DNA from: Blastocladiella emersonii ATCC 22665
Lineage: Eukaryota; Fungi; Blastocladiomycota
Direction: 5' to 3'
Length of the DNA: 64,000 bases
NCBI GenBank assembly: GCA_025594325.1
Contig: JANHCV010000013.1
Location: forward strand, 620,001-684,000
Each line of letters starts with the position of its first letter. Positions within the stretch are counted from its first letter, which is position 1. Of the stretch, positions 34,327-62,121 are shown one piece after another. A program made the position numbers and the translations under genes. The notes under the pieces were generated by a model. The model was not told where the DNA came from. It made no database searches and saw only the letters and a program-made list of their open reading frames with translations.

Positions 34327-34786
34327 TTCATGTCTGCCTCGGATTCCACATTGCAAAGTCGAATTAATACATAGTTGTCTTTTCCTTCTTCCTCCGTGTA
34401 ACTCTCCAGCCTGCCTTCGTTGAGCGTTGAGCGTTTCACCGCTCGCGGAGGCGACGGCCCAACCCAAAACGCGTCGGGCTCGCGTGCGAGTGGCGACTAC
34501 TCTCGGACTCGACAAGCTCATCCAAGAGTTCGATCAAGGCGTAGACAATCACGTCGTGGCCGTTGAATGGAGAGCGGTCGGCTTCGGGTCGTATGTGCTG
34601 GACAATCGTGCTTAGAGCACGCAATGAACAGTCTCCTGCTTCAATCGTTTTAAGAACACGCTGTTAAAGATGTCAACACGACCGTTTTATTGCGAGACGC
34701 CACGTCAACACGCTCTCCACCAATCCGTGGCAGGAACAGGGCCTTGCGAAAACCATCCGCGCACCTTGCCGCGAAAAAATTTCGAA

Positions 34787-34843
34787 CGGCCGCACTTGCG
34801 TAGGCGGCGCGGTCTTTTCACATCGCCCACGCGAGAGCGGCCG
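34787..34843 (-). repeat. Central stem-loop of the foldback repeat (copy 5)
   Basis: CGGCCGCTCTCGCGTGGGCG-ATGTGAAAAGACCGCGC-CGCCTACGCAAGTGCGGCCG. Confidence 0.8.
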
Positions 34844-36059
34844 GCCCGCGCGGTGCGAGGTGGTCAGTGAAGCTCAAGTTCGCTGCCGTACAGAGGAAAA
34901 CGTGTCGGTGGCGCGTGGATGAGGTCTGACGCGTGAAAGCGGGGCGATTGGTGCCGGAGAACGTCAATGATACGCAATGAGTGCGCCAGCGGTTGAAGTA
35001 CGTCTCGAGAACATCGGAAGTGCGGCATGGTATACATGACAGGGTTAAATGAGTGAAGTGGCCCTGAACATCGAAGGGCAGAGTATCGAGCGCCGTCACG
35101 TACTGCGCAAAGGGACTGCCAGTTCGGGCGCTTGGGTCGCACTTCAGGGCATTCTAGCATCTCCGTGGCCCATGAAGGCATTGAGTCCAGCGATCACCAT
35201 CGAGACTGAACGAGTGACTTTGAGGCGCCATCCAACCCAACCTTCTTACAACCTTAAGTCGGCGCAGCATTGCCCAACGATTGCAACTGTGTTGTGCGGT
35301 CCCACTGGTGTCGGCTTATTTCGCTCGAATAACGCCTTCAACCACGTCATACGACCTCACGCAGAAGCAAAAATGCAATTGGGTTAACGTGTGCGTGGAA
35401 ATTCGTCGTGGACTCGGAGCGATCGCGGAAGCAAAGGCGGACCGACGGCTTGCTGCAAGGATGAATAGGCAAGAAACCCGTTTTGAGTGCGGGACCTTCC
35501 ACGAGACTTGATCAAGACCACATTGCATTGAGTTACATTGTCATCAGGACGGGCGCCCGGTCGTGATAGGGAGCGATAGCAGTTGCAGCGCGGCGCTGTG
35601 ATGAGTCCGCCGCCACAGGCCTCCAGGTCGCGTGAGTGGCGCGGCGCGTCATCCGTCGCGGCAGCCCACATCAAAGAAACTATAATAAATCCTCGAGGAG
35701 ATAGAGTAAAAAACATCAGAAGGGTGCGCCCCGCCTCTGAAGGCGCGGTATTCCGCCGTGTTGATCAGAGTATCGAGCACGGGACGACAGACTAAACTGC
35801 CTATGCGGTCCCCACGCCAGCAGGTGCACGCCTACACTGCACGAACCTCAGCACAAGTACCTGACTCCCACCCACGGTACGCGACGTTGCCGACCCTCCA
35901 TCCTCGCACCAGAGCAACATGGCCCGTCCATTCCAGGGGGACTGTGAAAAGGACGAGTACAAGTCGACAAAACGGAGAAGTAAGAAAAACCGCACACGAC
36001 AAACTCGGGTCCAAGTAAGCGTCTCAACAATGAATGGCATCAATCGTATACTCACCCAA

Positions 36060-36437
36060 TCACCTCGTGCCCTTTGGCATCAGTCGTGCCGCGTTCAGCC
36101 CGTACGATTTGCACGCGACGCGGACTTAGTGGCGAAACCCCCACTCGGCGGTGGTCGCAGCGGTCACGGCAACGACCTTAGCCAGCCAGTCGCGTGTCGC
36201 ATCGACCGTCACTTCCCCATCCCTAGCCTTGAGCAGAACCCTCATCGACCGAGCTTTACCCACATCGGGGAGCGCTTTCCGTCAAGTGCCCCGCGCGGGA
36301 GCATCCGCAAGATGTGCCGCGGGGGGTCGGTCGGGATGTCGATAACCCCGTCGAGTACGAGCTTGGGAGCTGCGCGGTACAGCTGTTGGATGTTCCACGC
36401 CGTGTCCGATCCGGGTCCGCTGGTGCCGCTCGCCAAT
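36060..36437 (-). pseudogene. FBL8: C-terminal remnant paralogous to FBL9
   Basis: ELASGTSGPGSDTAWNIQQLYRAAPKLVLD...LPRGALDG...W, then (frameshifted) DATRDWLAKVVAV. Colinear with the FBL9 C-terminus. Confidence 0.8.
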
Positions 36438-37270
36438 TCAGCGCACTCCCGCGTGCGGCGCGGAATTTTCACGGCGCACGCGCGAGTGCAGCCCAGCGGT
36501 GCGGAGCGAGCGAGCCGGCGAGGTCCAAGCGCGGCTGCTGAGTGGCAAACAGTTGTTGCTGGTAGTGGTTCCCAGAGCAGGCGAGCAACGCGTAGGTTGG
36601 TCGAATGAGGTCTGGGGAGCGATTGAGCTCAACAAGGTAGGCAGTGACTACACCAGAGAAATGAGACGGTCATGTTGTAAGTGCACGGTTCTGGTGAGCG
36701 ACATTCACGCGGCTGCATACGCGTCTCAAGCTGAACGAGCTGACGCTCATGAACTACGTTGGTCCTGGCAGTGAGACTCCCGGGCATTTGTCCCAGGCGC
36801 AGTCGCATCAAACCGTGACCGCCACCACCGAGTTGGCGAAGGTCGCGGCTTGCGGGAGCTGCGTGCTCCGCTCGGAAATCATGATGGACCTTCAGTACAC
36901 TCGTCGGCGAGCGGATCGAGCAGCGAAGGCATGGCCCATGGCGAATTAGGGTCGCCCGAGTATCGGCGCAGGTGGAGCAGACTGCTGCGGAGAGCCGCGT
37001 GGTGCCTGACACCTGGTTTTGGTGCTGTTACCGCCCAGTCAACGACGAGCTTGCGAGCCTCATGCGGCGCGACGGCAACTGGCCAAACACCGGACACTTC
37101 AAGTTTACACCAAACTTGGTCCACGACCTGCTTTAAGCCCACAAATCGCAATGCGTCAAGTCCCATATTCCATCCTCTCCTACATCTCGACAGCTCCATG
37201 GCGGGGTCGGCGGAGTGACCCAACGTGACGCGCCGGCCGCCCTTCAACCTGACGCGTCGCCCCCGACGCC
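36438..37270 (-). mobile_element. Left arm plus central hairpin of the foldback repeat (copy 6), replacing most of FBL8
   Basis: Colinear with 49620-50308 (+), with shared runs gcgcgtcacgttgggtcac..gccgaccccgccatggag, ctgctccacctgcgccgatactcg and gctctgggaaccactac. Hairpin at 36438-36494. Confidence 0.7.
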
Positions 37271-37402
37271 AGCCGCACCTTCTTCAGCGCGTTGAATCTC
37301 TCACGAGCACGAACGTCAGCGCGAGAGCGCACGGTGAGGAGCACGGTGGTAGTATGAGGCATGTGCGGGGGTATCAGACCGAGCGAACAGCAACAGGAGC
37401 GG

Positions 37403-37438: not shown

Positions 37439-37945
37439 GCATTCGCGCTGGCCCGCGGCCGATGCACCTCAGTAAGCGTCTCCCGTCTCCCGTCTCCATG
37501 ATGCGTGCGCTTCGTGTTCTCACAGCCGGCACATCTTCCACACCTCGGCTCCGCAATTAAACGACTCCCCGCTTGCCAAACACCAAATCTTGGCTCACGA
37601 GCTGGGCAGAACGCTCGTGTTCTGTGGACTGAAACTTTTGATTCACTAGAAGGGAACCTCTCCTCTGGCATTCGGCGTGTACGGGGTAGCGTGAAGCTAT
37701 GTTGCGCGCAGGAGGTATCCAAGGTTTTTAAATGTGCGTCCTTGGCCCAAAGTGACGGTTAAAGAGCAACTTGGTGGCCACGGGCCGAACCTGTCGAAAA
37801 AGCGCGTCCTTAATGTCGCGCGTCGCAAAGTGCATGAAGCCTACCTCCGCCCCCGCGAGGTCGCGCGACATCAGCGCCGATCCGGAGCAACGACACACTC
37901 GCGTTCGCAGCATTGGACTCGAAAACCACTCGTTTATTCATCAAA

Positions 37946-40910: not shown

Positions 40911-42160
40911 TCACCCCAGCATCACCGCGACCCCAACCGCGACGAGCGCACCAAGCACGACCCGCACGCCACCCGGCCCCGCCTTGGGCGCCGCAGCACT
41001 GATCCCGGGGGTGCCGTAGTTGGACCCGCGCGCGACGACGCCCGTCGGTGATGGCGTCGCGGCCGATGCGGTCGCGGTACCCGTCCCGTTGACGACGCCG
41101 AACGAAACCCCCGAAGAGACAGCGGCGGGCGGGACCGGGGGCCGCGGGCGCGGGGTGTACTGGACGCCGTTGATCCCGGCGGCGACTTCGAGGAGGTCGC
41201 CGAACTCGTTAAAGTCTACACTCCCGCCCGCCCGCAAACGTCAGTTCCACGCACCCCCGCCCCGCCCCGTCCCGCGCGGCGCGAAAACGTACCAACGAGC
41301 GCGAAATTAACAAACTGCTTCCTGACCGCGGCACACTTCGCCAAATGCGCGCGCATCTTGGCCGCGCCATTCACCTTCTGCGCGTTGTCGGCAGACGGCG
41401 CGTCGAACCCGAACACGGACGTGTAGAGCCAGTGATTGACGAGCACCATTTCCCGCGTCGCGTTCCGCGGGCGGTCAAGCGCACACGTCCAGTCGGCTTC
41501 GGCGCGGAGCTCGAACGGGGTTTCGGAGATGTACGCGAAATGGGCCATGACGGGCGGCAGGGGAGCGCCGGCGGGAGGCGCGGGCAGGTCGCTCGCAAAC
41601 ACCAGTAAGCGCTTATCCCGGACCCCGAGCTCACGCAGCGTCGGCCAGCGGGGCTGTGCGGGCGGCTGCACGTACGCGAGGTTCGCGAGTCCCGCCGCCG
41701 CCAAGAGCGCCGCGAGCTCGGCGTACCCGGCCTTGGCGGCGTTCTCGATGGTCAGGACCACGACCTCGGCGCGGTTCGCGGCGAGGAACGCGCGGATCTC
41801 GCCGAGCCCCGCGGTCGCGGGCCCCGCGTCGAGCAGGCCGCACGAGCCGTGGCACAGGCGCAGGGACGTGGGGCCAGATGTGGAGTTGGCGGACGCGGCG
41901 CGGTGGATGTCAACCGACAAGAGGCGGACGCCGTAGTTGAGCTGGGCGGTGATGTTGGTGAACTGGTTGGCGGCGCCGCCGACGCCCACGGCGAACGAGT
42001 TGTGGGTGCCCGGGAAGAAGACGGCGGAGAGCGGGCGGTCGCACAGCGACGGGTGGCCGTTGCACGCGGTTGCGGGGGTCGCGGCGGCGGCGAGGAGAAG
42101 GGTGAGGAGGACGAGGGCGAGGCCGGCGCGGCCGGCGGGCGCCACAGCGGGTCGATGCAT
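40911..42160 (-). CDS. Secreted PI-PLC X-domain-like phosphodiesterase with a GPI/TM-like C-terminus, ~390 aa (exons 42160-41293, 41215-40911)
   Basis: Signal peptide; CNGHPSLCDRP...PGTHNSF...QLNYGVRLLSVDIH...LCHGSC...EVVVLTIEN. Intron gtacgt...gtgtag gives FALVDFNEFGDLLEVAAGING. Hydrophobic C-terminus. Confidence 0.87.
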
Positions 42161-48672: not shown

Positions 48673-48817
48673 CGACGATGAAGAGTTGATGATATAGATG
48701 GCGAGGTAGAGACTAGAGCGTTCCGAGATACATGTTCACATGGCTTGATCACATCATATCAATCAACTTGGAGTGTATCGAACGAGAGGAGAGAAACAGG
48801 GAAGTGGGGGGAACGGA

Positions 48818-49499
48818 TCAGCACTCGTTGGTCGCCTTGGTGTTGAGGATGAGCGCGACGATCAGACCTACGCCCCGCTTCGCGCGTCAGTTCCCCGCCG
48901 TCGCCCGCACAACCCCGCAACAGCGCGCGCGTACCGTAGAGCCCGAGCACCTCGGCGAAAATGAGCATGAGGACCATGCCGACAAACAGCCGCGGCGACA
49001 GCGAGTAGCCCTTGACGCCCGCGTCGCCGATCACGCCGACCGCGTAGCCCGCGGCCAGACCCGTGAACCCGACCGACAGGCCCGCGCCCAGGTGCAGCAT
49101 CCCCGTGAACAGCGAGTAGGGTGTGCCGGGCGACACTACAGGTCGGGGGTGAGGGGGTTAGGGGGGGAGGGAGGGTGGGGAGGGAAAAGACGTACTGTTG
49201 CCCGACACAACGACCGAGACGACGAGCCCGTACACGGCAATGATGCCCGCCATGACCACGGGGATCAGCGACTTCATGATCAGGTCCGGCCGGAACGTGC
49301 CCATCATGGCGATCCCGACGCCCGCCTTGGTGGTGCCGTAGGCCGCGCCGAAGGCTACACGACACACAACGTCTCAGCACCCGAGGGACGTCCATAGTAG
49401 CAAACAAAGCGAGCGCGACAAACCGGTCAGGATCATGGCCAGCGACGACCCCGCCAGGCCAAAGAACGACGCGTAGACGGGACACTGCTCGGACGCCAT
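48818..49499 (-). CDS. VMA11: V-ATPase V0 proteolipid subunit, c'-like (3 introns)
   Basis: [14 protein letters not shown]...[46 protein letters not shown]...[10 protein letters not shown]...GYAVG...[47 protein letters not shown] and ILNT favour c' (Vma11) over c (Vma3). The family call is secure; the paralog call is less so. Confidence 0.9.
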
Positions 49500-49649
49500 G
49501 GTGCGGTGCGTGTTGCGCGGTTGCGGCGAGTCGTTGATGCGTTGCAGAAGGGGCGCGTGTGCGTAGCGGAGGAGATCGGACGGATGAGCAACGCGCGGCG
49601 AGGTGAGTGCGGCGGGCGGCCGGCGGGGAGCGACGCGTCGGCGTGAGCT

Positions 49650-50850
49650 TCGGTGGGCGCGTCACGTTGGGTCACCTCTGCCGACCCCGCCATGGAGTTC
49701 TTGGGATGCAAAGAATGGTGGAGTGTATGACTTGGTGCATTGCGATTTATGCGCGTGAAGGAGACCGTGAGCCGAGTTGGGTTGCGGTGGAAGTGAAAAG
49801 TGGTGTCGCCAGACGCCGTCGCGCGCTGCGGGGCTCGCGAGCTCGCAGTCGACTCGGCTGTACATTTCAGTTCAAGCGTGTGTCGGGCACCACACGGCAA
49901 CCATCAGCATGCTGCTCCACCTGCGCCGATACTCGAGCGAGCCGTGCTTGCATTGGGCCGCGGTCCCGCTCCCGCGACCGTCATGATCCGGCACGCATTG
50001 CTGTATCGCGTCGACGTTCGCCTAACAGGCTTGTCCCGTGTACGTACCCACGCGGATCTCGCTCAGCGGACCCGCTGGCGAACTGTGTAGCCGTCCCCTC
50101 TCCCGTTCGGATGTAGAGTGGAACCAGCTCGCACTGTCCCGCTCCGGACACCACTTCGTCTACGCTTGCTCTGGGAACCACTACGCGCACCATCGGTTCA
50201 CCCCTCGCCAGCCACGCTCGGACCTCGCCAGCTCGCTCGCTCCGCGCCGCTGGGCCGCACTCGCGCGCGCGCCGTGAAAAGGCCGCGTCGCGCGCGCGAG
50301 TGTGGCCCTATCGGCTCGTGTGGTTGCGGCGGGTGGTCACGCGAGATCTTGGCGCGACGGCGGCTAGCGGTTACCGTGGTTCCGAGGTGTGGGCCTCTCA
50401 TGTCTCGAATAGAGATCGCTTCTCTGAAATGTCTTCACCGGGTGTCGCTTGCTGAGAGCTCCTCAGTCACGAAGGTGACGGGCATCTCACGGCCACTCTA
50501 GAAACGAGGGTACTTGACGCGCGCGCCGTGGTCCTCGACCAGTTGAGCCCTCGATGCGGCGGTTCACTTGTGATCACCAACGAGCGCGAGGTTGGGAGCA
50601 TGAGCGACGCGTTTGACATGTGTACAGCTCAAGAACTCCCCTGGCAGCTCGCGCGACGGCCACGCTTTTCTCGACCTGCTGTCAATGTGCCCGCGTACGC
50701 GGACAACGGGTTAGCGAGCGGCCAGTGGTCGCTGCTCACGACCGGCACCTACTTTGCCCCGCTTTCCACTTCGTCAGCGGAGGAGGGTTTTTCCGTCGAG
50801 AGCATCAAGAGAACGCGCTCAATCACGCCCATTAACCCAACGAACACAGT
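49650..50850 (+). mobile_element. Unclassified ~1.2 kb foldback (long imperfect palindrome) repeat, most complete copy (copy 1); central hairpin 50252-50308
   Basis: Nested, colinear inverted matches around 50280: 20-bp stem; GGAACCAC 50174 / GTGGTTCC 50376; GCTGTACA 49857 / TGTACAGC 50621; GCCGTCGCGCG 49815 / CGCGCGACGGC 50650; CGTTGGGT 49665 / ACCCAACG 50835. Homologous segments occur elsewhere in the window. Confidence 0.7.
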
Positions 50851-51619
50851 AACGCCGCGTGGCGAACGGGCGACCACGCCGCCAGGACAACCCAGCGACC
50901 GTCCTCGCCCTGGGCAGGCTTCATCAGGCACCTGCAGTATCTGCACATGACGGAGTCCAGCTCTTGCGAGGGAGATAGGCGCGTCGAGGAGCATTGGCGA
51001 CGCGGCGGTGAAACGCGGTCGAGCGCGTCGCGGTCGGCGCACTCAACCGCGTCCCGGACGCTGCACATGGAATACCTTTATGAATGAAACATAGACTTGC
51101 TGCAACGCGATTTATGGTCGGAGACTACGTTGTTCTCCGAGTTCGGCGCCGATTGGGACTGTCGAAGTGCAGCCGGCTGATGCGCGCGCACGAGCCGCAC
51201 GTCCCGCATGACTTGGCTTCTAGTTTGGCGACGACCGGCGTCTGGAGGATAACGCTCACGACCGCCAGATCATCCGGTGATAAAGTTGACGAAGTTCATG
51301 AAGTCGGCCAATCCGATCCGCGATGGGATGTGCTTCCAGCGCTCAGTCTGCGGAGCGCGCACGCGGAACAGGGGAAGCCTGGCACTACTCAGGGCTACGC
51401 CGAGAACCAATTCCTCGAATCCCAAGTCCGATTCATGATCTCGAGTGTACCAGTACGTCAAGCAGTTCTCGAATCACGGCTGCGCGACGAAACGCCACGC
51501 TGGATTGCTCTGCTCTCGTGTGCTTGAGACACGTACGTCTTTAACGCGCGGTACTTCTTCAGCCGACCAATTCGCTGACTTGTGCCCGTCCCATCGACTC
51601 TTGGCAGGCATGGGCAACT

Positions 51620-52300
51620 TGACGACTCACCAATCGCCCAGCTCGCATCCACACGTTTCGCTTCTTCACTCACACCAACTCGCACGCACAAGACTGGCTC
51701 AATGGCCTTTCCCGTTGTGCTGCCACGCCATGGGCAACGTTTTACCGCTCGCCGCCAAAGCTCAAATCTCGCCGCATCGCTTGCGCTGCGTTGCTGGGCC
51801 GCACTCGCGCGGGCGCCGTGAAAAGGCCGCGTCGCTCGCGCGGGTGCGGCCCGCTCGGCTCGTGTGGTCGCGGCGGGTGGTCACGCGAGATCTTGGCGCG
51901 ACGGCGGCAAACGGTCACCATGGTTCTGAGGTGTGGGCCTGTCACGTCTCGAATGAAGATCGCTTGTCCAAACTATCTTCACCGTGTCGTTTGCTGAGAG
52001 TTTCTCATTCATTAATGTGGCCAATGAACCACGGTCATTCGTGCACATGGCGCACTTGACGTGCGCGCCGCGATCCTCCATCAGCCGTCCTCATAACACG
52101 GATCACTTGCAGCCGCTAATGAGCGTGAGGTCGACAGCATGGGCGACGCGGGTCAACATGTGTATGGTTGCAAGTCCCCTTTGCCATCTCGCATGACGGC
52201 CAAGTTTTTCTTGGGAAGTTAATATGCTCGCTGGACAACGGCGCGGCGCGAGGCCTGTGCCTCTCATGCTTGACAGCGTCTATGCCCTCTTCAGCGCTTA
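51620..52300 (+). mobile_element. Foldback repeat copy 2 (hairpin 51796-51852 plus right arm)
   Basis: Colinear with ~50120-50780, e.g. ggcgggtggtcacgcgagatcttggcgcgacggcggc is identical, and gagcatg.gcgacgcg..acatgtgta is shared. Confidence 0.75.
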
Positions 52301-54173
52301 CTGCTGGCACCCGTCCACGTGAAGCTGCGCGCCGGGCACACAGCGGGCCTCAGCGGACGCTTCGTCGGCGCTAAGTCTATCGCAAGTAAATCCTGGTACA
52401 CGAGCTTTTCGCGTAGCTTGGCCGGTACGCGAATTTTATCCTCTTCTACCGCAAACGGTCGGCGCGACCTGCTCCAGTCTGATTTTGGGCGCTTGGGCGG
52501 CGACCGCGTCGCTCAGGTCAAGCGGCTTCGCCCGCCGTGGCGCAGCGCCAAGGTATGTGGACGCGTGATGGGCGTCTGTTTGTCGCGGTCGATTGACACG
52601 CCAGGGACGAGTGTAGATTGAGTGCCTTATTGATCGGGTTCGCCCGACTGCGCTCCACCATCCTGCCGAAACTGGCGAGGATGACGCATCCATGCCCGCA
52701 CCTCAGCATCACGCGCGCGGGAACCGGCGCCTGGCCGTCGTCGCAGTCGACCATTTCGCGGCCTCGCCCGAGATACCCATGGCGGGAATGCTTGTCCCTT
52801 TTGACGTGCGCGCGACCCTCGGTTTCGAGGTGGCCGCGCCGCACGCGGGCCCGACCATCGAGACGAACCGCCAGGACCGGATTCGCGAGGCCGAGGTGCT
52901 CGCAGAGCATCTCGATGACCCATCGTACAAGCTTTTCTACTCGCCCGCTGATGATGCGTGGACAGCGCGACCGCGCCGCTGTTGGGCGAAGCAGCGCCAC
53001 GGAGTTGGATGGATCCAGTTCTTTGTATTTCTTCCGTTTCCTATGTAACAAGCTGTGCCTTATTCAGTTCTATCGTGTTAAACAAACCTTGATGTTTTTA
53101 GTACGTGGGCAGCATGACTCAAGCAACGGCGCACGAACAAACCGCGCAGTTGTGGACGCGTTGGTCATCTGCACGTGACGCGTTGTGGGGTCCGAACAAG
53201 GTTCCGAACCCCTTCGCTCGCGTTCTTACTGCGGCCGGGAGGGTCCTTCCGCCGCGGTGCTATTTAAGCTTCACCCGCCCGCCCTCTCCTCAGCAAGGCA
53301 CACTTCTCCCCCACGGCCGCCCCTCGTCAAGATTTTCGCCCTGTATAACATGTGCGCCACGGTTGACGTGACGGTGACGGGTACGCCTACTCCCAGCTTG
53401 ACCGTGACGGTCGTGTGTGTCTCGTCGGCCGACCTAACTCATGGATAACCTGTCCTGTGTGCGCTCGTCATTGTCCAGGCTAACGGAGTCGGGTCAAGTC
53501 GGCGACAAGGTCAACGGCCATTGTTCGGCCTGTTCTCGTCTGGTCGCTGATCCGTACGTGCGCTGCTGTGTCTCCCCCTTTTCGCCTCCGCCGATGCCTC
53601 TCGTGGCATCTTGACGAGTCTGCTGGCGAGCGGAGCCCGTCCTCACGGGCCTCGTTTGCGGGCCGCCGTCGCGAGGCACCTCGCTCGCGCTCCTCGGACC
53701 GCTCACTGACGTCCTGTGTGCCGTCAATTGTAGCCGGCGTCGCTCAAACATCTCGGTGTACGTGTTCTCCTCATCACGACTTGGCGGTGGTGCTGGGCGG
53801 GCGCGACCGCCGCCACGTCCACGGCCGCGGCTTGCCGCTGCTGCTCGAGCTGTGCCTGGCCATCATCGTGATGGCGGTTGTTACCGGCTCGATGCGGTGG
53901 TTGCGAGTCGCAGTTGACGGGCGCGGCGGTGTTCGCCGTCGCGGCTGACGGGTGCGGCGGCGTGTGACGGGCGGCGGTCGTCGGCTGTGCGGTGCCCGCG
54001 AGCCGGCCAATCGGGGGCGGCGTGATTTCGGGCGGCGAGTGTGGCGCGACGCGTGAAACGCGTGCGCGGGCGCGAGCGGGGTAGTCGCTGTTATGATCAC
54101 CTCAATATACGTGATTTGCCGGATAACGTGTCATGATGAGTCAGTAAATGATATTCAGCTGTATCGAGCCAAA

Positions 54174-54599: not shown

Positions 54600-55960
54600 A
54601 GCATCACGTGAGCCAGGCACGTGCGCATGTCCCGCGCGTGAGGCAGCGACGGGTCCAGCGAGCGCCTGAGCCTAAAGCCCTGATGGATGTGCAGCGGCAA
54701 GGACAAGGAGGAAGCTTGGTGCCGACCCATGGACATTGCATGCCGTGCGCAAGCGCACTTGGCCTTGGGCGAGTAATGGAATAATGTGAGAGCGCCTGGT
54801 CGGGCCCTGTTAACAGCTCCCTTTGGGTACAGCTGATCTGCGATCGATACCTGATTGACGCGGGCGGGGGTCTGCCAGATCTCACCCTTTTGCTCGCGCC
54901 TCAATTAAATTGGTTGCCTTTACTTTTGACCCAGAATTTGTTCCGCCACTTACGCTGCGCTTTCTATCCATCTTATAGATATATATATATATATTATATT
55001 ATTATACTGCGCAGTATGTGCATGACTTGCATCATGGTTGTCATCAATCGGTTCTCCGAGTTGACGCAATTTATCCCGCTTGCCGCGTTCTCCAGCGCCG
55101 CCACGGCCGCCGACACGTTCTTCAAGCACGCAGCACGACCGCGCAGGCTGCCCGACGACATCGTTTTGGACCGCGGGTTGCAGATCACGTCGCGGTTTTG
55201 GTCGGCTGTGTGCGACGCGCTCGTGATCAAGGCCAAGCTCTCAATGGCGTTACCCCTATCATACAGACCGACCGGCTGACCGAGCGTATAAACCGGACGC
55301 GTAAGGTGGATTTGCGCACGTTTGACAGCGAGGATCAGTCGAACTGGGCCAAGCTGCCGCGGTACGCCGATGGCTATCAACAACTCGGTCAGCGAGTTGA
55401 TGAGCGTGTCGCCGTCGTTCATGGCAAACTACGAGCTCCACCCGCGTCACTTGGCCGCGCCCGCGCGTTTGAATTGAGTTCTGTCGGCCGCGGCGCTGGC
55501 CGAGCGCATCGCCGACATCCAGGGCCAGCTGCTCGAGAAGGTTGAGCGCGCCAAGCAGCTGTATTTACAGAAAGTACGCCGACCGCCATCACCGCGAGGG
55601 CCCCCAGTTAAACGCCGGGGGACATGGTGCTGCTGAGCACCAAGAACCTACGCGTCGACGTGCCCAAGGCCAAGCTCGGGCAGAAGTTCACGGAGCCGCT
55701 CAAGATCGTGCGCCTTATCCGCAAGTCGGCCATCGAGCTCAAGCTGACCATGGCGCGCGTCCACCCGGTGTTCCACGTCTCGCTCATCAAGCCGGTGGTC
55801 GCGCACGACGAGGACACGTTCCCGGGCCGCACGCCACCGCCGCCGGCGCCGTACGTCGTCAACGGGCGCGAGGAGTGGTCGGTCGAGGCGATCGTCGACG
55901 CGCGCAGGTCGGCTTCGGGTCGCAGCATCGAGTACCTGGTCAGGGCTTGCTTTAGACGGG
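54600..55960 (+). mobile_element. Decayed Ty3/Gypsy (chromovirus-type) retrotransposon: integrase core plus chromodomain
   Basis: IMVVINRFSELTQFIPL, LPDDIVLDRGLQITSRFWSAVCDALVIKAKLSMA, frameshifted YH.QTD..TER.N, GDMVLLSTKNL...KFTEPLKI...VHPVFHVSLIKP, and chromodomain EEWSVEAIVDAR...IEYLVR. Frameshifted; no gag or RT seen. Confidence 0.88.
54974..55006. repeat. (AT)n microsatellite inside the Gypsy remnant
   Basis: tatagatatatatatatatattatattattata. Confidence 0.85.
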
Positions 55961-56989
55961 CGCAACTGCGTGTCCGCGTCATAGTGCAAAAAACAAGGCG
56001 CGACATAGCACGAAACAATTTTATCATCTTTACGAGTGCAACCGTCTCTAAGGCAGGCGCGTCGGTTACCCGCACGTGACGGTTGGGGCTTGCCACAACG
56101 ATCGCCGCATGAACCCCGGAGTCTAGTTCTCTTCTCCACAACCCTTCCCATGGTCCGTTGATGTAGCCACTCGATGCAACGTTATGTTTGAGATGTAAAC
56201 TGGGCTTCTATGCAGCCCCATGCGGTCATTTGCACAACTTGCATACCGTGAACGACTCGGAGTGCAAGCTGTGCTTCCGAAATCGGTGCACTTGCCTCGT
56301 TGTTTGACTCGAATCGGGCCTTGATCAATTCGCAGTGCATGCTACTGCTCGGCTCAGTCGATGATGCCGAGCGGGGAGCTTCGCGGCATTGGGGAGCGAA
56401 CGACACCCACCCGCAACTCCAACTCGCAAACGACTTGACTCCTTCCACCGATGTCTAGATAAAGAGCGGATTGGCTTCAGCACTATGCGCAGTGCGTTGA
56501 TGCTGCTCGGGACTCAAGAGCGCACGATTCACAGCGTCGGAAGCGATTTGGACATGCTGTCGGCCAGAGTACTCGCTGAGATGACGCGTAGAAGCGTCCT
56601 TGGCTGCACAATGAGCGCGTGATGCCCTCGTTATCCGTGATCAGCAGCTCGAGCTACCGTCTCGAGTTACACGGCTTGCCCTCATCTCCAGTGCTTAGAT
56701 TTTGTTCGTCCGTTGACTCGCACTGCCGCTCGCATGGGCGTTAGCTCCAAGCTCGCTGGGACTACGTTTTCGGGCACCAGCTCATCGTAAGCGGCTTTTC
56801 GAACAGCGCCCGCGATACATTCCGTGGCTGCCGCCATTGCAGTGGGCGACTCATGCTCTCACTCCGCCAGCTCCAACCTAAGAAGCATCCTTGCCCTCCA
56901 CCCGACCAAACACACTATCTCGCTGCTGCTTAGATCGCCATCTCAAAATCACCATCGAGCCGCTGGATCTCTGTACGCTGTTCGGACCG

Positions 56990-57330
56990 CCGCACAAACT
57001 CGATTCTCGGCCGCTTGCGACCATTACACTCGATTCGCCGACCCGCTCGCGTCGCGTTGCTGGGCCGTACCCGCGCGGGCGCCGTGAAAAGACCGCGCCG
57101 CCCGCGCGGGTGCGGCCCTCTGTACTCTTTGTCGCAGCGCGGTGACGGGTGGTTGGGCGCTTTCGCGTTGGAAGCGAGAGAGGCGGCGCGAGTCAGATGG
57201 CGTTGCGGAGCATGTGAAGGGGCCTCGCTGGAATAGAGCTTGCTTGGTTGCACTGCCATTGTTGGTTCATCGGCTGAGAGGTACAGATTCCGCAGAACGA
57301 GCAGAAGATCAGATCGCTGCGGGAAGCCGA
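56990..57330 (+). mobile_element. Foldback repeat copy 3 (hairpin 57062-57118)
   Basis: GGGCCGTACCCGCGCGGGCG-CCGTGAAAAGACCGCGC-CGCCCGCGCGGGTGCGGCCC. Flanks are colinear with copy 4 (cactcgattcgccgacccgctcg). Confidence 0.75.
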
Positions 57331-58364
57331 CTAGACTACTCTTGATCAACAGATCGCGCGAGCAGCAAGGGCTCGCTCAGTCCAGCGTTCGATCGACGAG
57401 CGACGAGCGGGGCAGACGTAGAAGCAATCAGGCCAGGGAAGCAGTCAACTTCAACCTCGATTGATTGCCAAGGAACTTGCCGAGTCGCCGCGGCGCGCGT
57501 GCGTTGAGTCGCGTCGTTCACTCGCACGTGATGCGCCAGCTGCGGATCGTTCATCGCCGGCTGAGCCCTACGGCCTTGCCCTCCTTTTCCTTGTCCACTC
57601 GATCGTCGGCCGATGCAGTCACTAGATGCAATGTAGCCGGTGAGCATGGAATATGAGCCTGTTCGAATTCCCGGGCTGAAGTGCACAAGCTGGCAGCTGA
57701 CGGCCGTTGCTGCTGCAGGACGCGACTCTGAACAATGGTGCGTTCAACTCACACCGCGTTCGACCACCAGCAGTCCATCTATGTCGCTGGGTGCGCTTGG
57801 CGGCTCTCTCCAGCGTGGTATGATGATGGCGGGAACGTTGCGTCACCCGCGCGGGTGAGGAGTCTGACTCTTACCCATCTAAAGCTGCGCGTCGCGGCAG
57901 TGCACTAATGCCTTCTCCCGTTCGTCCGAACTCCAGAGCCCAGACCGTTTGGCATTGTAAGCGCGGACGGCGCCTCGACTTTTCACGCGCGCAGGGATTA
58001 TGATCTGCGAGTTCAGCGGATCCAGCCAAGTTCCACCATTCCCGAGTAGCAGCTCGAGGCAGCTTCTCCCGCACGTCGCGCTTACCCGCCTTGTCGGTCT
58101 TCGCTCGCGAACTGGCTCAGTCGAGACGCCTCATACACTTCATCCGCGTGAAGCAGCTGAACGATGCGGCCACTCGATTTCGTCGCTCTGCTATATCCCG
58201 CGGCTGCCGCTCCTGCGGGTAGCAGATCTTTCTCTCGCTGTTGATGAACTTGCCCAGGCAATCTCTTCCGAGTCAAGGGCGTCAAACGCAATACCATGAC
58301 GCTGCCCATCGTGCCAATTCGCACTCTACAATCGGCCCGCGGGATCTCATATTCGCTACTTGAA

Positions 58365-58700
58365 CCGCCGCAAGCACTCGATTCTCGACCCCATGCTGTC
58401 AACACACTCGATTCGCCGACCCGCTCGGGCTGCGCTTCTGGGCCGCACCCGCGCGAGTGCCGTGAAAAGACCGCGCCGCCCGCGCAGATGCGGCCCTATG
58501 AACATTGTGTCGCAGTGTGGCGACGGGCGATCGTGTGGGATGCGAGGTCCAAGGGAGCGAGATGGCGTGGGCGGGCTGCGGCACTGGGGTGCGTTGCGGG
58601 GTGTTATTGGATACAATTTGCTCAAGCGCGTTGTGAGCGGTGGTCCGTACACAGCGAGGCGTGCAGTTTACGGAGACGGAGGGAGATCAGGATCGCCGCG
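58365..58700 (+). mobile_element. Foldback repeat copy 4 (hairpin 58440-58496, more decayed stem)
   Basis: GGGCCGCACCCGCGCGAGTG-CCGTGAAAAGACCGCGC-CGCCCGCGCAGATGCGGCCC. Confidence 0.75.
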
Positions 58701-59118
58701 TGGCACTGAATGCACAGGATCGGCGCACCGCGCGAGCTGCGACAGTCCGACGTCCTGTCGTCATACAAAGCGTCGAAGCGAGCAACACATGGACGGCGGA
58801 GACGATAGTAGCAAGAAGGAGACGGGCGTGCAAGATCGGGAGCAAGAGTTGGGCGCCACTCGACGGCAGGGCCGGGGTTGCTGCCGCTCAGCGACGTTTC
58901 GCAACAAACCACGCCAAAGTAGCAATAATGTCTCCCAATTCATGTTGCATCTAGTCTCCCATGACACATGGTCGAATTCATTGCAGGAGGGGAGAGGGAA
59001 GCTAAGGCAACGGAGGTCAGCTGACGCCTCGCGATGGCCGTTTCCGCCCGCTTCGCCCACGCGTCGCTCTCTTCTCTCTGCTCTCCCCCTCCCTCCCTTG
59101 ATCGGGTCGATCGACACC

Positions 59119-62100
59119 ATGAACCCCATGTACCACCACCACACCCCGCGGCGCCGCCCGCGCGCGGCCCTGCACCTTCCCCTCGCGCTGGCCCTCGCCG
59201 CCGTCACGGCGTGCACCCTTCTCCTCCTCGCCATCGCCACCCCGGCCGCCGCCGTCAAGCGCGAGGACTTCAAGACGTGCGCGCAGTCGGCCTTCTGCCG
59301 GCGCCACCGCGCGTGGCCCGCCGTTGTCCCGTCGCTGCCGTCCGCGTGGACCGCGACGCCCTCCCCCAACCCCGCCAAGGACGCGTGGCGCGCGTCCCTC
59401 GTCGCGCCCAACACGCCGAGCCCGCTGACGCTCGAGGTCACGTCGCTCGGCAACGCGGCGGTCCGCGTGCGCGTCGTCGACCCAGCGGACCCGCGTCCGC
59501 GCGTGTTCAGCGCGGCGGAGGTCGCGCTCGTGGCGCGCACGGGCGACGGCGAGGTGACGGTGGTCCGCGAGGATAAGACGGGCGCGACGCTTCGCGTGGG
59601 TAAGGCCGAGGTCCGCGTCACGTACACCCCGCTGCGCGTCGCGCTCGTCACGGGCGGCGTCGAGCAGGTCGTCGTCAATGACCGGAACTGGCTCCGTGTC
59701 GAGACGGGCGCGGTCGCGGATCTCGATGCGCTGGTCGCGGGGGTCGAGGATGAGGAGAAGGCCAAGGCGTGGCGCGCGGCCGAGGAGGACGGCGTTGGCA
59801 AGGAGGGGTTCAAGGAGCATACGGATTCCAAGCCCTATGGTACGCGTTTCCCGATCCATCTCACGCACGACTCGCACTCACCACGCCCGCAACTAGGCGC
59901 CCGCTCCGTCGGCTTCGACCTGACCTTCCCCGCGACCGCGCACGCGTACGGACTCGCCGAGCACGCCACCGACTTCAACCTGCCGTCGACGCGCGGCGCG
60001 GACGCAAAGTACGCCGAGCCGTACCGCCTGTACAACCTGGACGTGTTCGAGTTCGAGCTCGACTCGCCCATGGCCCTGTACGGCGCGGTCCCGTTTCTCC
60101 TGACGCAGGGCGACCGCGGCGCCGCCGGCGCCCTGGTCCTGAGCGCCTCCGAGATGTGGGTTGACGTCGAGCGCACTTCTTCGTCGGACCTCCTTGCGCA
60201 CTGGATGGTCGAGTCCGCTCCCCTCGACCTCGTCCTGCTCGCGGGCCCAACCGCCGCCGACGTGCACGCGCAGTACATGCGGCTGACCGGGTTCCCGACG
60301 CTCCCGCCGCTGTTTGGGGTGGCGTACCACCAGTGCCGCTGGAACTACAACGACGAGGCCGACGTGCGCGACGTCGACGCCGGGTTCGACACGCACGATA
60401 TCCCGTACGACGTGCTGTGGCTCGACATCGAGCACACGGACGGCAAGCGCTACTTCACGTGGGACGCCCTCAAGTTCCCGAACCCGGCCAAGATGATCGA
60501 CGGCGTCGCCGCCAAGGGCCGCAAGATGGTCACCATCGTCGACCCGCATATCAAAAAGGACGACCAGTACTACGTCTCGGCCGAGGCGACCGCCAAGGAC
60601 CTGCTCGTCAAGTCGCCGCCGCCCAAGGACAACGCGGCGCCTGCGCCGTTCGGCGGATGGTGCTGGCCCGGCGACTCGAACTGGATCGACTTCCTGAACC
60701 CGGCCGCGCGCGACTGGTGGGCGTCGCTGTTCTCCCCCGCCAAGTACGCGGGCTCGACGCGCAACCTGTTCACGTGGAACGACATGAACGAGCCGTCCGT
60801 GTTCACGGGCCCCGAGATCACCATGCCCAAGGACGCACTGCACGTCGGCGGGCTCGAGCACCGCGACGTCCACAACGTGTACGGCATGCAGCAGCACCGC
60901 GCGACGCACGCCGGCCACCTCGCGCGGACTTCGGGCAGTCTTGACGCCATCGACCGCCCGTTCGTCCTGTCGCGCGCCTTCTTCGCGGGGACCCAGCGGT
61001 ACGGCGCGATCTGGACCGGCGACAATTTCGCGCGGTGGGACCACCTCGCCTCCTCCACGCCCATGCTTTTGGGGTTAGCCGCCTCGGGCATCGTGTTCGC
61101 GGGCGCCGACGTCGGCGGGTTCTTCGGGAACCCGGACCCGGAACTCCTGGTGCGCTGGTACCAGCTCGGCGCGATGCAGCCCTTCTTCCGCGCGCACGCG
61201 CACATCGACACCAAGCGCCGCGAGCCGTGGCTGTTTGACGACGCCACGCGCGACCTGATCCGCGCCGCGGTCCGCAGACGGTACCGCTGGATGCCCACCG
61301 TGTACACGGCCTTCTTCGACGCGTGGCGCACCGGGTCTACGGTCAATACCCCGCTCGTGTTCGCGTTCCCCGACGACCGCAACACGTGGGCGAGCCAGGA
61401 CGCGTTCCTCCTCGGTACCTCGATCCTCGTCGCGCCCGCTACGCAGCCCGGGCAGCGCGAGGTCACCACGTACCTCCCCGCGGGCACCGCCGGCGCGGGC
61501 TGGTACGACATGGCCTCGTCGCCCGCGGGCTGGCGATACCTCCGCGGCGCCCAGTCCGTCACCGTCGCCGCGCCCCTCGACACGCTCCCGCTCTTCGCGC
61601 GCGCCGGGTCTGTCCTCGTCGCCCGCGAACGCGTCCGCCGCGCCTCCGCCGCCGGGCTCACGGACCCCCTGACGCTGTACATCGCCCTTGACAAGGCGGG
61701 CCGCGCCGCAGGGCACTTCGTCGTCGACGACGGCCAGACGTACGGTGTTCTCGCGGGCGCCGCCGTTGAGGTCCGCGTGACGTTCGCGGACGGCACACTT
61801 CGCGCATCGCTCAGCGTCCCCACCGGCATCGTCCCCGCGCGCCCCGCGGTCGGGGATGAGCGGCTCGTGTCGCAGCGGCGCGAGATCAAGACGGACGACG
61901 GCGTGCGCGGCAAGTTCATGCACCGGTTCGGCGGCGTGCGCGTCGAGCGCGTCGTGGTGGTCGCGCCGAGCGCGGAGGTGGTGAGTCTTGCGGTGCCGGG
62001 CCAGGTCCGTGTTGGGGGTAAGGGGGTGGCGGAGGTTACGGTCCGTGATGAGGGGCGGTGGATCGAGGTCAAGGAGCCTGGGTTCCGCCTGGGCGATGAG

Positions 62101-62121
62101 GGGTGGGAGATGCAGCTGTGA
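59119..62121 (+). CDS. ROT2: Glucosidase II alpha subunit (GH31), ~981 aa (in-frame intron 59840-59896)
   Basis: Signal peptide then AVKREDFKTCAQSAFCRR, EPYRLYNLDVFE, YHQCRWNY, WLDIEHTDGKRYFTWD, catalytic WNDMNEPSVF and WTGDN, FFRAHAHIDTKRREPW. The start is MNPM at 59119; the ORF-track extension to 58360 is read-through of repeat DNA. Confidence 0.95.
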   Translation: MNPMYHHHTPRRRPRAALHLPLALALAAVTACTLLLLAIATPAAAVKREDFKTCAQSAFCRRHRAWPAVVPSLPSAWTATPSPNPAKDAWRASLVAPNTPSPLTLEVTSLGNAAVRVRVVDPADPRPRVFSAAEVALVARTGDGEVTVVREDKTGATLRVGKAEVRVTYTPLRVALVTGGVEQVVVNDRNWLRVETGAVADLDALVAGVEDEEKAKAWRAAEEDGVGKEGFKEHTDSKPYGTRFPIHLTHDSHSPRPQLGARSVGFDLTFPATAHAYGLAEHATDFNLPSTRGADAKYAEPYRLYNLDVFEFELDSPMALYGAVPFLLTQGDRGAAGALVLSASEMWVDVERTSSSDLLAHWMVESAPLDLVLLAGPTAADVHAQYMRLTGFPTLPPLFGVAYHQCRWNYNDEADVRDVDAGFDTHDIPYDVLWLDIEHTDGKRYFTWDALKFPNPAKMIDGVAAKGRKMVTIVDPHIKKDDQYYVSAEATAKDLLVKSPPPKDNAAPAPFGGWCWPGDSNWIDFLNPAARDWWASLFSPAKYAGSTRNLFTWNDMNEPSVFTGPEITMPKDALHVGGLEHRDVHNVYGMQQHRATHAGHLARTSGSLDAIDRPFVLSRAFFAGTQRYGAIWTGDNFARWDHLASSTPMLLGLAASGIVFAGADVGGFFGNPDPELLVRWYQLGAMQPFFRAHAHIDTKRREPWLFDDATRDLIRAAVRRRYRWMPTVYTAFFDAWRTGSTVNTPLVFAFPDDRNTWASQDAFLLGTSILVAPATQPGQREVTTYLPAGTAGAGWYDMASSPAGWRYLRGAQSVTVAAPLDTLPLFARAGSVLVARERVRRASAAGLTDPLTLYIALDKAGRAAGHFVVDDGQTYGVLAGAAVEVRVTFADGTLRASLSVPTGIVPARPAVGDERLVSQRREIKTDDGVRGKFMHRFGGVRVERVVVVAPSAEVVSLAVPGQVRVGGKGVAEVTVRDEGRWIEVKEPGFRLGDEGWEMQL

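What the first reader, a model, noticed from the sequence alone, without database searches (positions are those of the whole stretch)
49650..50850. A dispersed ~1.2 kb foldback element that is conserved at its centre rather than at its ends
Seen: five nested inverted matches lie in colinear order around 50280 (20-bp stem, then 8-, 8-, 11- and 8-mers out to about 600 nt), so the region is an old, long palindrome. Arm-specific sequence recurs at 36.4-37.3 (-), 51.6-52.3, 57.0-57.3, 58.4-58.7 and 34.8 (-) kb, so the unit spread after its arms diverged. Known: MITEs and Foldback/MULE-type elements keep their outer termini best because the transposase binds there. Here the outer arms are eroded while the central 57 nt stay nearly perfect. 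Inference: the active site is central. It could be a nick/origin for an HUH rolling-circle enzyme, a recombinase or resolvase site, a captured hairpin-telomere junction of a linear replicon, or a short IR-plus-spacer that seeds large palindromes, as at the Tetrahymena rDNA centre. No cognate enzyme is encoded in this window.
Basis: partly seen in the sequence, partly recalled or inferred. Interest (0 to 1): 0.8.

Follow-up and report, generated by a model that had tools for sequence, protein, structure and literature searches.

The report
Conserved hairpin inside decayed repeat units
The supposed 1.2-kb "foldback" is not a long palindrome: it is a decayed, non-coding repeat unit, probably of transposon origin, that carries a well-preserved 57-base hairpin found dozens of times in this fungal genome, whose function is still unknown.

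Summary
Partly confirmed, reinterpreted. The 57-nt GC-rich hairpin at 50252-50308 is real: z -6.9, six copies in the window, none expected by chance, and about five independent compensatory changes. It is the best-kept part of every copy. The "old 1.2-kb palindrome" is not supported. Outside the hairpin the arms are no more complementary than shuffles (local score 18 vs 17.6±3.0), and the colinear chain of five inverted 8-11-mers is reached by 8% of shuffles.

The hairpin sits inside discrete, non-coding 1.2-1.4-kb direct-repeat units: A 49560-50821, C 50965-52352, B (-) 37309-36442 (cut at the hairpin), D 56055-57427, E 57507-58781, and a remnant F. They form two families that share only the hairpin and perhaps 30-50 nt on its 5' side.

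Assembled contigs of the source sample pile up 11-14x on the hairpin alone, sometimes as 57/65-nt tandems. The scan had already noted this hairpin family on another contig of the genome (s1-283581).

My best reading (0.45) is decayed mobile-element sequence, slightly favouring LTR-type repeats near a Gypsy integrase remnant. The hairpin would be its constrained cis-element, probably also homogenised by short conversion tracts. TG..CA ends, TSDs, Helitron/Helentron ends and MITE features could not be shown. No Rep, recombinase or transposase was found in the ORFs scanned, and no RNA run was listed.

The parts
50252..50308 (+). Hairpin A: 24 predicted pairs with one C/U mismatch, and a loop containing the invariant GTGAAAA
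   Evidence: -52.9 kcal/mol, z -6.87
49560..50821 (+). The ends are approximate. The 5' end is shared with B and C; outside it identity falls to background
   Evidence: no codon-position bias against B (30/34/30 differences)
50965..52352 (+). Repeat unit C (family 1), head-to-tail with A after a spacer of about 143 nt. Hairpin C lies at 51796-51852. Identity to A is 74% overall, but 84-94% from the hairpin to +130 nt
36442..37309 (-). Repeat unit B (family 1), containing the 5' part and the hairpin (36438-36494). Homology stops 4-5 nt before the 3' end of the hairpin
56055..57427 (+). Repeat unit D (family 2), with hairpin D at 57062-57118. It starts 112 nt after the last recognisable Gypsy integrase homology
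57507..58781 (+). Repeat unit E (family 2), head-to-tail with D after a 79-nt spacer. Hairpin E lies at 58440-58496. The unit ends 8 nt before the ATG of the GH31 gene
34657..34992 (-). Remnant F, with its hairpin at 34787-34843. Its flanks are not significantly related to either family
55010..55944 (+). Ty3/Gypsy integrase remnant (rve core, SH3_Tf2-1, first half of the chromodomain). It is the only mobile-element protein found in the ORFs scanned
48759..49499 (-). Neighbouring host gene, read by eye as the V-ATPase proteolipid subunit c, in three exons. Unit A begins about 60 nt upstream of its start codon
   Evidence: translations; the family is assigned from my own knowledge and was not run against Pfam
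58789..62121 (+). Neighbouring host gene, glycoside hydrolase family 31

Best explanation
The stretch is one copy (A, about 49560-50821) of a discrete, non-coding 1.2-1.4-kb direct-repeat unit, not a palindrome.

Five such units lie in the window. They form two sequence families: A, C and the truncated B; and D and E. They sit in head-to-tail pairs. A sixth hairpin (F) lies in a shorter remnant. The families share only the 57-nt hairpin, plus perhaps 30-50 nt on its 5' side. The same hairpin occurs some tens of times elsewhere in the genome.

I read the units as decayed, non-autonomous mobile-element sequence. I slightly favour LTR-type terminal repeats of Ty3/Gypsy-like elements, each adjacent pair being the two LTRs of one internally deleted element. 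I read the hairpin as the constrained cis-acting module of those elements, working as a folded single strand, most likely in the sense transcript.

The hairpin outlasts the arms for two reasons. Its pairing is maintained, as the compensatory changes show. It is also probably homogenised by short conversion tracts that start at the palindrome.

Shown: the hairpin, its copies, covariation, unit extents, lack of coding signal, lack of arm complementarity, and multi-copy status in the genome. Inferred: mobile-element origin, the LTR class, action as RNA, and conversion.
For: - Unit structure and soft but consistent ends. Identity outside the ends is at background, 0.41-0.52 against 0.50±0.04; inside it is 0.55-0.62.
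- D and E have unrelated sequence on both outer sides, so they are discrete units, not one segmental duplication.
- No coding signal. Differences by codon position are 30/34/30 and the indels shift the frame. No Pfam family is found in the arm ORFs.
- Each unit's closest relative is its neighbour: A-C 74%, D-E 65%. This is what the two LTRs of one element would show.
- All four units at 49.5-58.8 kb have the same orientation as the only retroelement protein in the window, the Gypsy integrase at 55010-55944.
- Purine-rich runs (GGAGGAGA, GAGAGA, GAGGGAGA) lie at the 5' edge of A, B and C, and A and E have TGAG at the point where homology starts.
- The hairpin is real and maintained. 93% of cells are paired, four pairs show changes on both sides (about five independent events), and at most 4 of 500 shuffles reach these values. 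Slid controls collapse to 26-60% paired. z scores are -4.6 to -7.4.
- The sense strand is the more stable in five of six copies. There are 8 G:U pairs on the sense strand against 4 on the antisense.
- The hairpin is 75-93% identical in every pair, while flanks are 36-68%.
- The extra well-kept tract differs from pair to pair. In A-C it extends 130-160 nt to the right; in A-B and D-E it extends 75-90 nt to the left. That pattern fits conversion tracts rather than one fixed functional unit.
- Genome-wide, contig depth is 1474-1808 over the hairpin bins against 129 for unique sequence. The matching pieces cover only 50238/45-50307/09, and joints that go back 57 or 65 nt indicate tandem hairpins.
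Against: - No LTR hallmark could be verified. TG..CA ends are ambiguous. There is no matching 4-6-bp target duplication: only one 6-mer coincidence for A, and none for C. No clear primer-binding site was found.
- Integrase homology stops inside the chromodomain, 112 nt before unit D, so D is not demonstrably the LTR of that element.
- Unrelated LTR families rarely share one 57-nt block at up to 91% identity.
- The two LTRs of one element should diverge evenly, so conversion or selection must be added to the model.
- Hairpin E is 9 kcal/mol more stable on the antisense strand, so strand specificity is not clean.
- No RNA run was listed, so transcription is unknown.
- I could not fetch other loci of this genome.
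Confidence: 0.45

Rival explanations
1. The hairpin is a structured RNA of its own, for example a protein-binding hairpin or a Dicer-type small-RNA precursor. Copies are kept by purifying selection in each copy. The 1.2-1.4-kb units are merely old local duplications that carried it along.
For: - Compensatory changes and a G:U excess on one strand.
- An invariant GTGAAAA loop in six copies.
- The hairpin is conserved 75-93% while paralogous flanks decay to 36-68%.
- Tandem arrays of the hairpin elsewhere in the genome resemble clustered small-RNA genes.
- Earlier follow-ups in this genome proposed other hairpin RNA families (not tested here).
Against: - No Rfam family matches. The best hit is mir-1307 at E=4.8 and 18.9 bits, against a gathering score of 69.
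- No RNA run was listed.
- Conserved loops with varying arms are the opposite of the microRNA pattern.
- Hairpin E favours the antisense strand.
- All copies lie in repeat-rich, gene-poor islands rather than in a fixed position relative to genes.
- The pair-specific conserved tracts are not explained.
Confidence: 0.2
2. The hairpin is the recognition or termination hairpin of a rolling-circle (HUH) element: Helitron/Helentron-like, or REP/IS200-605-like. It would be shared by otherwise different non-autonomous elements that the same enzyme mobilises, and head-to-tail pairs would come from rolling-circle transposition.
For: - Only the hairpin is shared between families. In Helitron-like elements the stem-loop end is the better conserved one (PMC11417382).
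- No target duplication was found.
- The copies form three same-orientation pairs spaced 1.4-1.65 kb apart.
- B ends at the hairpin.
- Contig matches stop sharply at 50307-50309, and a T follows the hairpin in most copies.
- First-reader notes report Helentron-like elements elsewhere in this genome (untested).
Against: - Within both families homology runs 300-500 nt past the hairpin and then stops, so the hairpin is not terminal in A, C, D or E.
- There is no CTRR after the hairpin on either strand (read).
- There is no inverted match between the unit's 5' end and the leader before the hairpin in four of five units.
- A 23-24-bp stem is much longer than usual Helitron hairpins (my knowledge).
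- No Rep/helicase ORF was found in the ORFs scanned.
Confidence: 0.12
3. The 57-nt hairpin is itself a miniature inverted-repeat element: two 23-bp terminal inverted repeats around an 11-nt spacer, like the 80-bp palindromic MADE1 of mariner. It would have inserted into each unit family and been mobilised in trans by a DNA transposase.
For: - Contigs elsewhere in the genome match only about 65-70 nt.
- The hairpin is shared by otherwise unrelated units.
- Other foldback MITEs are noted in this genome (untested).
Against: - No target-site duplication flanks the hairpin. The 2-3 nt either side do not match in A, D, E or F.
- The 5' flanking 28-50 nt is also weakly conserved, so the unit is asymmetric.
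- Every copy of a unit family carries the hairpin at the same place, and no empty site was seen.
- Compensatory changes and a fixed asymmetric loop are not expected for transposase-bound inverted repeats.
Confidence: 0.08
4. One reading: the region is an ancient 1.2-kb palindrome whose arms have eroded around an active central site.
For: 14 inverted matches of 8 nt or more lie between the arms, against 6.8±2.8 in shuffles (2% of shuffles reach this). Duplex energy shows a weak tendency at ±110 nt.
Against: - Arm-to-arm alignment is at shuffle level. The colinear chain is reached by 8% of shuffles, and the direct control scores about the same.
- BLAST finds no inverted match beyond 50243-50318.
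- The left and right arms each have direct-repeat paralogues that do not resemble each other.
Confidence: 0.02

Closest known systems
Solo or paired LTRs of Ty3/Gypsy retrotransposons, with a structured R-region hairpin (as TAR and the poly(A) hairpin in retroviral LTRs)
   Same: Discrete, non-coding, kilobase-size direct repeats. They occur in same-orientation pairs, and each is the other's closest relative. They lie beside a Gypsy integrase remnant in the same orientation. An internal hairpin is kept better than the rest.
   Different: TG..CA ends, a 4-6-bp target duplication, PBS and PPT could not be shown. The two unit families share nothing but the hairpin. The integrase remnant is not contiguous with unit D.
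Helitron-like elements (HLE1 Helitron, HLE2 Helentron), PMC11417382
   Same: A GC-rich stem-loop is the conserved cis-element shared by otherwise diverged non-autonomous copies. There are head-to-tail arrangements and no target duplication. A T follows the hairpin.
   Different: Here the hairpin is internal, 300-500 nt from the 3' end of the unit. There is no 5' TC or 3' CTRR, and no 12-16-nt terminal inverted repeats. The stem is far longer. No Rep/helicase was seen.
SINE superfamilies defined by a conserved central domain (CORE-, V-, Deu-, Ceph-, MetaSINEs; PMC4824008, PMC4758252)
   Same: Dispersed non-coding repeats in which an internal block is conserved across families while both ends differ. 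This is the same 'conserved inside, not at the ends' pattern.
   Different: There is no tRNA/5S/7SL head (ARAGORN found none), and no A/B boxes or poly(A)/LINE tail were shown. The units are 3-5 times longer. The conserved block is a near-perfect hairpin.
Small mobile GC-rich hairpin elements: bacterial REP/BIME with RAYT, the mitochondrial double-hairpin elements of Allomyces, yeast mitochondrial GC clusters (my knowledge; cited in papers listed)
   Same: A short GC-rich hairpin is repeated tens of times, sometimes in clusters or tandems, with its structure maintained.
   Different: Those elements live in bacterial or organellar genomes. This one is nuclear, as the host genes with introns around it show. 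No RAYT/HUH partner is known, and the copies here sit inside larger repeat units.
MADE1/mir-548-type palindromic MITEs (my knowledge)
   Same: A hairpin-sized palindromic repeat that could give hairpin RNA.
   Different: There is no TA or other target duplication. The conserved loop and 5' leader are asymmetric. No small-RNA evidence exists.

Membership tests
Foldback / long-palindrome element | Left and right arms are reverse complements over hundreds of bases | tested here: not met
   Local score 18 vs 17.6±3.0 in shuffles. Global score 35 vs 26.7±4.7, with the direct control at 31. The only inverted BLAST match is 50243-50318. The colinear chain of 5 is reached by 8% of shuffles.
MITE | Terminal inverted repeats at the outer ends of the unit, plus a target-site duplication | tested here: not met
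   No inverted repeat joins the unit ends. No duplication flanks the 57-nt hairpin in A, D, E or F, or units A and C.
LTR (solo or paired) of a Ty3/Gypsy element | 5'-TG...CA-3' ends with short inverted termini | tested here: inconclusive
   A and E have TGAG where homology starts. A and C have ...GCTCA / ...CCTCA about 500-513 nt after the hairpin. D lacks TG, and at 65-74% identity these short matches are not significant.
LTR (solo or paired) of a Ty3/Gypsy element | 4-6-bp target-site duplication | tested here: not met
   For A, only a 6-mer coincidence (CGCGTG at 49554 and 50856). For C, no 5-mer or 6-mer match.
LTR (solo or paired) of a Ty3/Gypsy element | Flanks an internal region with gag/pol, with a PBS after the 5' LTR and a PPT before the 3' LTR | tested here: inconclusive
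   An integrase remnant in the same orientation lies at 55010-55944, but 112 nt of unrelated sequence separate it from unit D. No RT/RNase H is found anywhere in the window. Purine-rich runs lie at the 5' edge of A, B and C. No convincing PBS was found.
Helitron (HLE1) | 5' TC, and a 3' short hairpin followed within about 10 nt by CTRR, inserted between A and T | tested here: not met
   Homology continues 300-500 nt past the hairpin in A/C and D/E. No conserved CTRR lies next to the hairpin on either strand.
Helentron / HLE2 | 12-16-nt terminal inverted repeats with a stem-loop after the right repeat, inserted between T and T | tested here: not met
   The inverted match between the unit's 5' end and the 70 nt before the hairpin is at shuffle level in A, B, D and E (p 0.26-0.75); only C reaches p=0.002. 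A T follows the hairpin in most copies. The hairpin is not terminal.
HUH-enzyme substrate (REP/RAYT, IS200/IS605-like, Rep origin) | A cognate HUH enzyme in the genome that nicks at or beside the hairpin | not testable with these tools
   No Rep/HUH domain is found in the window ORFs scanned. The rest of the genome could not be searched.
Known RNA families (Rfam 15) | A covariance-model match at the gathering score | tested here: not met
   No match in the whole window. With permissive filters on 49400-52400 the only hit is mir-1307, at 18.9 bits against a gathering score of 69, E=4.8.
SINE with a conserved central domain | A Pol III head (tRNA/5S/7SL-derived) and a LINE-type or A-rich tail | tested here: not met
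   ARAGORN finds no tRNA-like head in any unit. No poly(A) or tandem tail lies at the unit ends.
Hairpin-telomere (protelomerase) resolution site | A perfect palindrome with a symmetric centre | tested here: not met
   The 11-nt centre is asymmetric and conserved (GTGAAAA invariant in six copies).

The most novel reading that the evidence does not exclude
The 57-nt hairpin, with its short 5' leader, is an autonomous module of a kind not described for eukaryotic nuclear genomes. Either it is a REP-like, structure-recognised hairpin spread by a single-strand (HUH-type) enzyme, or it is a new multi-copy structured RNA kept by selection in each copy. In both cases it would have entered several unrelated repeat units and would also form tandem arrays.
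Probability: 0.15. Interest if true: 0.75.

Novelty: new variant of a known kind. Interest (0 to 1): 0.4.

Why it matters
If the hairpin is only the conserved cis-element of an unclassified transposon family, the result is useful mainly for annotating repeats in Blastocladiella emersonii. No repeat or transposon analysis of this genome turned up in the literature searched. The result also warns that GC-rich DNA yields chains of short inverted matches by chance.

If the hairpin is maintained in each dead copy, it becomes a tractable case of one of two things: a new structured RNA or hairpin-recognising mobility system in an early-diverging fungus, or palindrome-centred gene conversion that shapes repeat evolution.

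Tried and rejected
- Long palindrome: rejected. An extended foldback within ±60-200 nt shows no MFE signal and only a weak duplex tendency.
- Protein-coding arms: a Kozak-like ATG is shared by A and B, but codon positions differ equally (30/34/30), A has an in-frame stop, and the indels shift the frame. No Pfam hits in the arm ORFs.
- tRNA-derived SINE head: none. The only ARAGORN call lies inside the GH31 coding sequence and is a false positive.
- Rfam: nothing.
- A 200-290-nt 'core' shared by all copies: nhmmer alignments extended that far, but profiles built from flanks alone do not find the other family, so I dropped it.
- Unit D as the 3' LTR abutting the pol stop codon: weakened, because integrase homology ends at 55944 inside the chromodomain.
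- Simple tandem segmental duplication for D-E: rejected, because the sequence outside the units is unrelated.
- Helentron inverted repeats: not found.
- Relatives in other collections: metagenome scans gave 0 hits and then 6 chance hits (17-24 bits against 76-100 for the true copies). The viral scan gave 0.
- Routes to other loci of this genome failed. The paralogue ORF and hairpin-spanning ORF protein searches were empty. An exact look-up was not on record. The best integrase relatives lie on very large (~21 Mb) contigs of other genomes, one next to a Sushi-domain gene, so probably animal.
- No RNA run was listed, so expression is untested.
Full report
**Context.** The window is GC-rich nuclear DNA (55-74% GC) with intron-bearing host genes. 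An earlier follow-up note names the organism as Blastocladiella emersonii; I did not verify this independently.
- Left of the finding lies a minus-strand gene whose three exon translations I read as the V-ATPase proteolipid subunit c, with its start codon at 49499 (my reading, not a database hit).
- Right of the repeat cluster lies a GH31 glycosidase gene starting at 58789.
- Between them, at 49.5-58.8 kb, is a lower-GC stretch of about 9 kb in which no ORF matched a Pfam family apart from a Ty3/Gypsy integrase remnant.

- Positions 50252-50274 and 50286-50308 are 91% complementary around an 11-nt spacer.
- As a single strand it folds at -52.9 kcal/mol, z -6.87, and none of 200 shuffles folds as well.
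- A 23-nt pattern across its loop finds exactly six sites in the window with up to 3 mismatches, where none is expected by chance.
- A covariance model finds the same six (76-100 bits) and nothing else above 17 bits.

The long palindrome is not real.
- BLAST of 49.0-51.8 kb against the window gives a single inverted self-match, 50243-50318.
- Aligning the left arm with the reverse complement of the right arm scores no better than dinucleotide shuffles: local 18 vs 17.6±3.0, global 35 vs 26.7±4.7. Comparing the arms in direct orientation scores about the same (31).
But 8% of shuffles give such a chain, and the direct control gives nine matches with a chain of four.
- Pairing of the flanks beyond the hairpin is not more stable than shuffles by MFE. 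Duplex energy shows only a weak tendency at ±110 nt.

**What the arms are.** Self-comparison by BLAST and nhmmer shows direct repeats, not inverted ones.
- Family 1 has three copies:
  - A, about 49560-50821.
  - C, about 50965-52352. It is 74% identical to A over 537 nt, with a weak match of its 5' block at 50979-51183.
  - B, on the minus strand, 37309-36442. It matches the 5' two-thirds of A and stops 4-5 nt before the end of the hairpin.
- Family 2 has two copies: D, about 56055-57427, and E, about 57507-58781 (65% identical).
- F (34657-34992, minus strand) is a short remnant.
- Outside the unit ends, identity drops to background: 0.41-0.52 against 0.50±0.04. Inside it is 0.55-0.62.
- The sequences just outside D and E are unrelated on both sides. 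These are therefore discrete units rather than one large segmental duplication.
- The units do not code. A and B share a Kozak-like ATG, but differences fall equally on the three codon positions (30/34/30). A has an in-frame stop at codon 13, and the indels shift the frame. No arm ORF matches Pfam.

**What is shared between families.** Only the hairpin is.
- Profiles built from the flanks alone, with the hairpin removed, recover their own family at E<1e-25. They do not find the other family (E>1).
- The only hint is a pair of reciprocal, non-significant hits immediately 5' of the hairpin.
- In a common alignment the hairpin is 75-93% identical in all ten pairs. The 40 nt before it are 42-82% identical, and the 190 nt after it are 8-47% identical between families.
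- So 'conserved at its centre rather than at its ends' is true as a statement about conservation, but the hairpin is not the geometric centre. It lies about 690-1000 nt from the 5' end of a unit and about 300-510 nt from its 3' end.

**The hairpin as a structure.** On the six copies, 93% of the 132 stem cells are standard pairs.
- Four of 22 pairs show changes on both sides. By my count across lineages these represent about five independent events.
- At most 4 of 500 column shuffles reach the observed values. Sliding the partner by 1-3 columns drops pairing to 26-60%.
- The loop motif GTGAAAA is invariant.
- Strand evidence is suggestive, not clean. There are eight G:U/U:G cells on the GTGAAAA strand, against four C:A/A:C cells that would be G:U on the other strand.
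- Five copies are 2.8-10.8 kcal/mol more stable on that strand, but E is 9 kcal/mol more stable on the other.
- With six sequences in roughly four lineages these numbers are modest.
- Template-switch correction of quasi-palindromes can also create matched changes without selection (PMC3820800).

**Genome-wide status.** Only DNA runs of one sample, probably the source of this assembly, hold the region. No RNA run was listed.
- I laid their contigs on 49400-52400 at 80% likeness. Summed contig depth is 1474-1808 over the two hairpin bins, against about 129 over unique sequence.
- The extra pieces match only 50238/42/45 to 50307/09, or 51788 to 51852. They lie in the interior of contigs of 3-32 kb.
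- Their adjoining sequence agrees only 47-69% with a consensus.
- Some contigs join a hairpin end back to a hairpin start 57 or 65 nt upstream, which means tandem hairpins.
- Depths of contigs are not copy numbers, so I only say 'some tens of copies at 80% or better'.
- A first-reader note records the same 57-nt hairpin family on another contig of this genome (s1-283581). That fits, but it is not independent proof.
- Exact-pattern scans of metagenome and viral collections found nothing real.

**Why the hairpin is better kept than the arms.** Within each pair the well-kept tract is different.
- In A-C it runs from the hairpin about 130-160 nt to the right, at 84-94%.
- In A-B it covers the hairpin and about 90 nt to the left, at about 84%.
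- In D-E it covers the hairpin and about 75 nt to the left, at 72-91%.
- A fixed functional unit under selection should give the same conserved segment in every pair.
- Tracts that all include the hairpin but extend to varying sides look more like short gene-conversion tracts seeded at the palindrome, laid over constraint on the hairpin itself. This is inference.

**What kind of unit is it?** I tested four classes.
- LTR.
  - For: the units are discrete, non-coding and kilobase-sized. They occur in same-orientation neighbouring pairs in which each is the other's closest relative. They lie next to a Gypsy integrase remnant in the same orientation. Purine-rich runs and TGAG lie at the 5' edge.
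  - Against: TG..CA ends are ambiguous. No target duplication, PBS or RT was found. Integrase homology ends inside the chromodomain, 112 nt before D.
- Helitron/Helentron.
  - For: the stem-loop is the only element shared between families, as in Helitron-like elements, where right terminal sequences are more conserved than left ones (PMC11417382). The pairs are head-to-tail, a T follows the hairpin, and B ends at the hairpin.
  - Against: homology continues 300-500 nt past the hairpin in both families. There is no CTRR, and there are no terminal inverted repeats in four of five units.
- MITE: no target duplication, and the conserved loop and leader are asymmetric.
- SINE with a central domain: the conservation pattern is the same (PMC4824008), but there is no Pol III head or tail.
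- No HUH/Rep, recombinase or transposase domain was found in about 60 ORFs scanned.
- I could not reach other loci of this genome through the protein-based tools, so the class remains open. I slightly favour the LTR-type reading.

**Verdict.**
- The hairpin, its copies and its preferential conservation are real.
- The 1.2-kb palindrome and the mechanisms that depend on it (telomere junction, palindrome seeding) are not supported.
- The most likely picture is a decayed, unclassified mobile-element unit carrying a conserved, structure-maintained hairpin module that belongs to a genome-wide family.
- Whether the hairpin acts as RNA, as single-stranded DNA, or not at all in these dead copies cannot be settled without a genome-wide census and expression data.
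The single read-laying run used 3001 letters.

Noticed in passing
window 48759-49499 (-): A three-exon gene whose translations ([14 protein letters not shown]..., ...[15 protein letters not shown]..., ...[16 protein letters not shown]...) read like the V-ATPase proteolipid subunit c. Unit A starts about 60 nt upstream of its ATG.
   Followed up: partly
window 36041-36440 and 37927-38327 (+): A 400-nt direct repeat (67% identity) brackets the 1.49-kb stretch that holds unit B. The left copy abuts the broken end of hairpin B to within 1-2 nt.
   Followed up: no
window 55010-55944 (+): The Gypsy remnant keeps only the integrase core, SH3_Tf2-1 and the first half of a chromodomain. No RT/RNase H is found anywhere in the window, and the reading frame loses homology right after ...IEYLVR.
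   Followed up: partly
window 6500-22100 (+): A cluster of paralogous ORFs about 59-66% identical at the DNA level (for example 11151-12410, 14780-16156, 17385-18757, 20965-22012). They have no Pfam family and no hit in the protein search.
   Followed up: partly
window 4977-5140: A 164-nt stretch that matches its own reverse complement at 65% identity (E 6e-10). It is a separate imperfect palindrome in a GC-rich coding-like region.
   Followed up: no
window 49630-49700, 37200-37270 (-), 56057-56080, 57507-57535: The 5' ends of the repeat units carry similar short motifs (GCGCGTC / CGACGCGTC and CACGT-type boxes). These could be promoter-like elements, or simply GC-rich chance resemblance.
   Followed up: no
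window 61088-61178 (+): ARAGORN calls a tRNA-Arg(TCG) inside the GH31 coding sequence (...[23 protein letters not shown]...). This is almost certainly a false positive.
   Followed up: yes
window 50269-50355 and 51818-51899: Short-read (Logan) contigs of the source sample break at both hairpins, as expected where a repeat exceeds the assembler's word length. Hairpin loci may be misassembled in short-read assemblies.
   Followed up: no
window 22186-23703 (-), 41216-42160 (-), 31079-32665 (+): Host genes seen while scanning for enzymes: Sucrase/ferredoxin-like (E 5e-41), a weak PI-PLC-X match (E 7e-4), and DUF4470 (E 1e-13).
   Followed up: no
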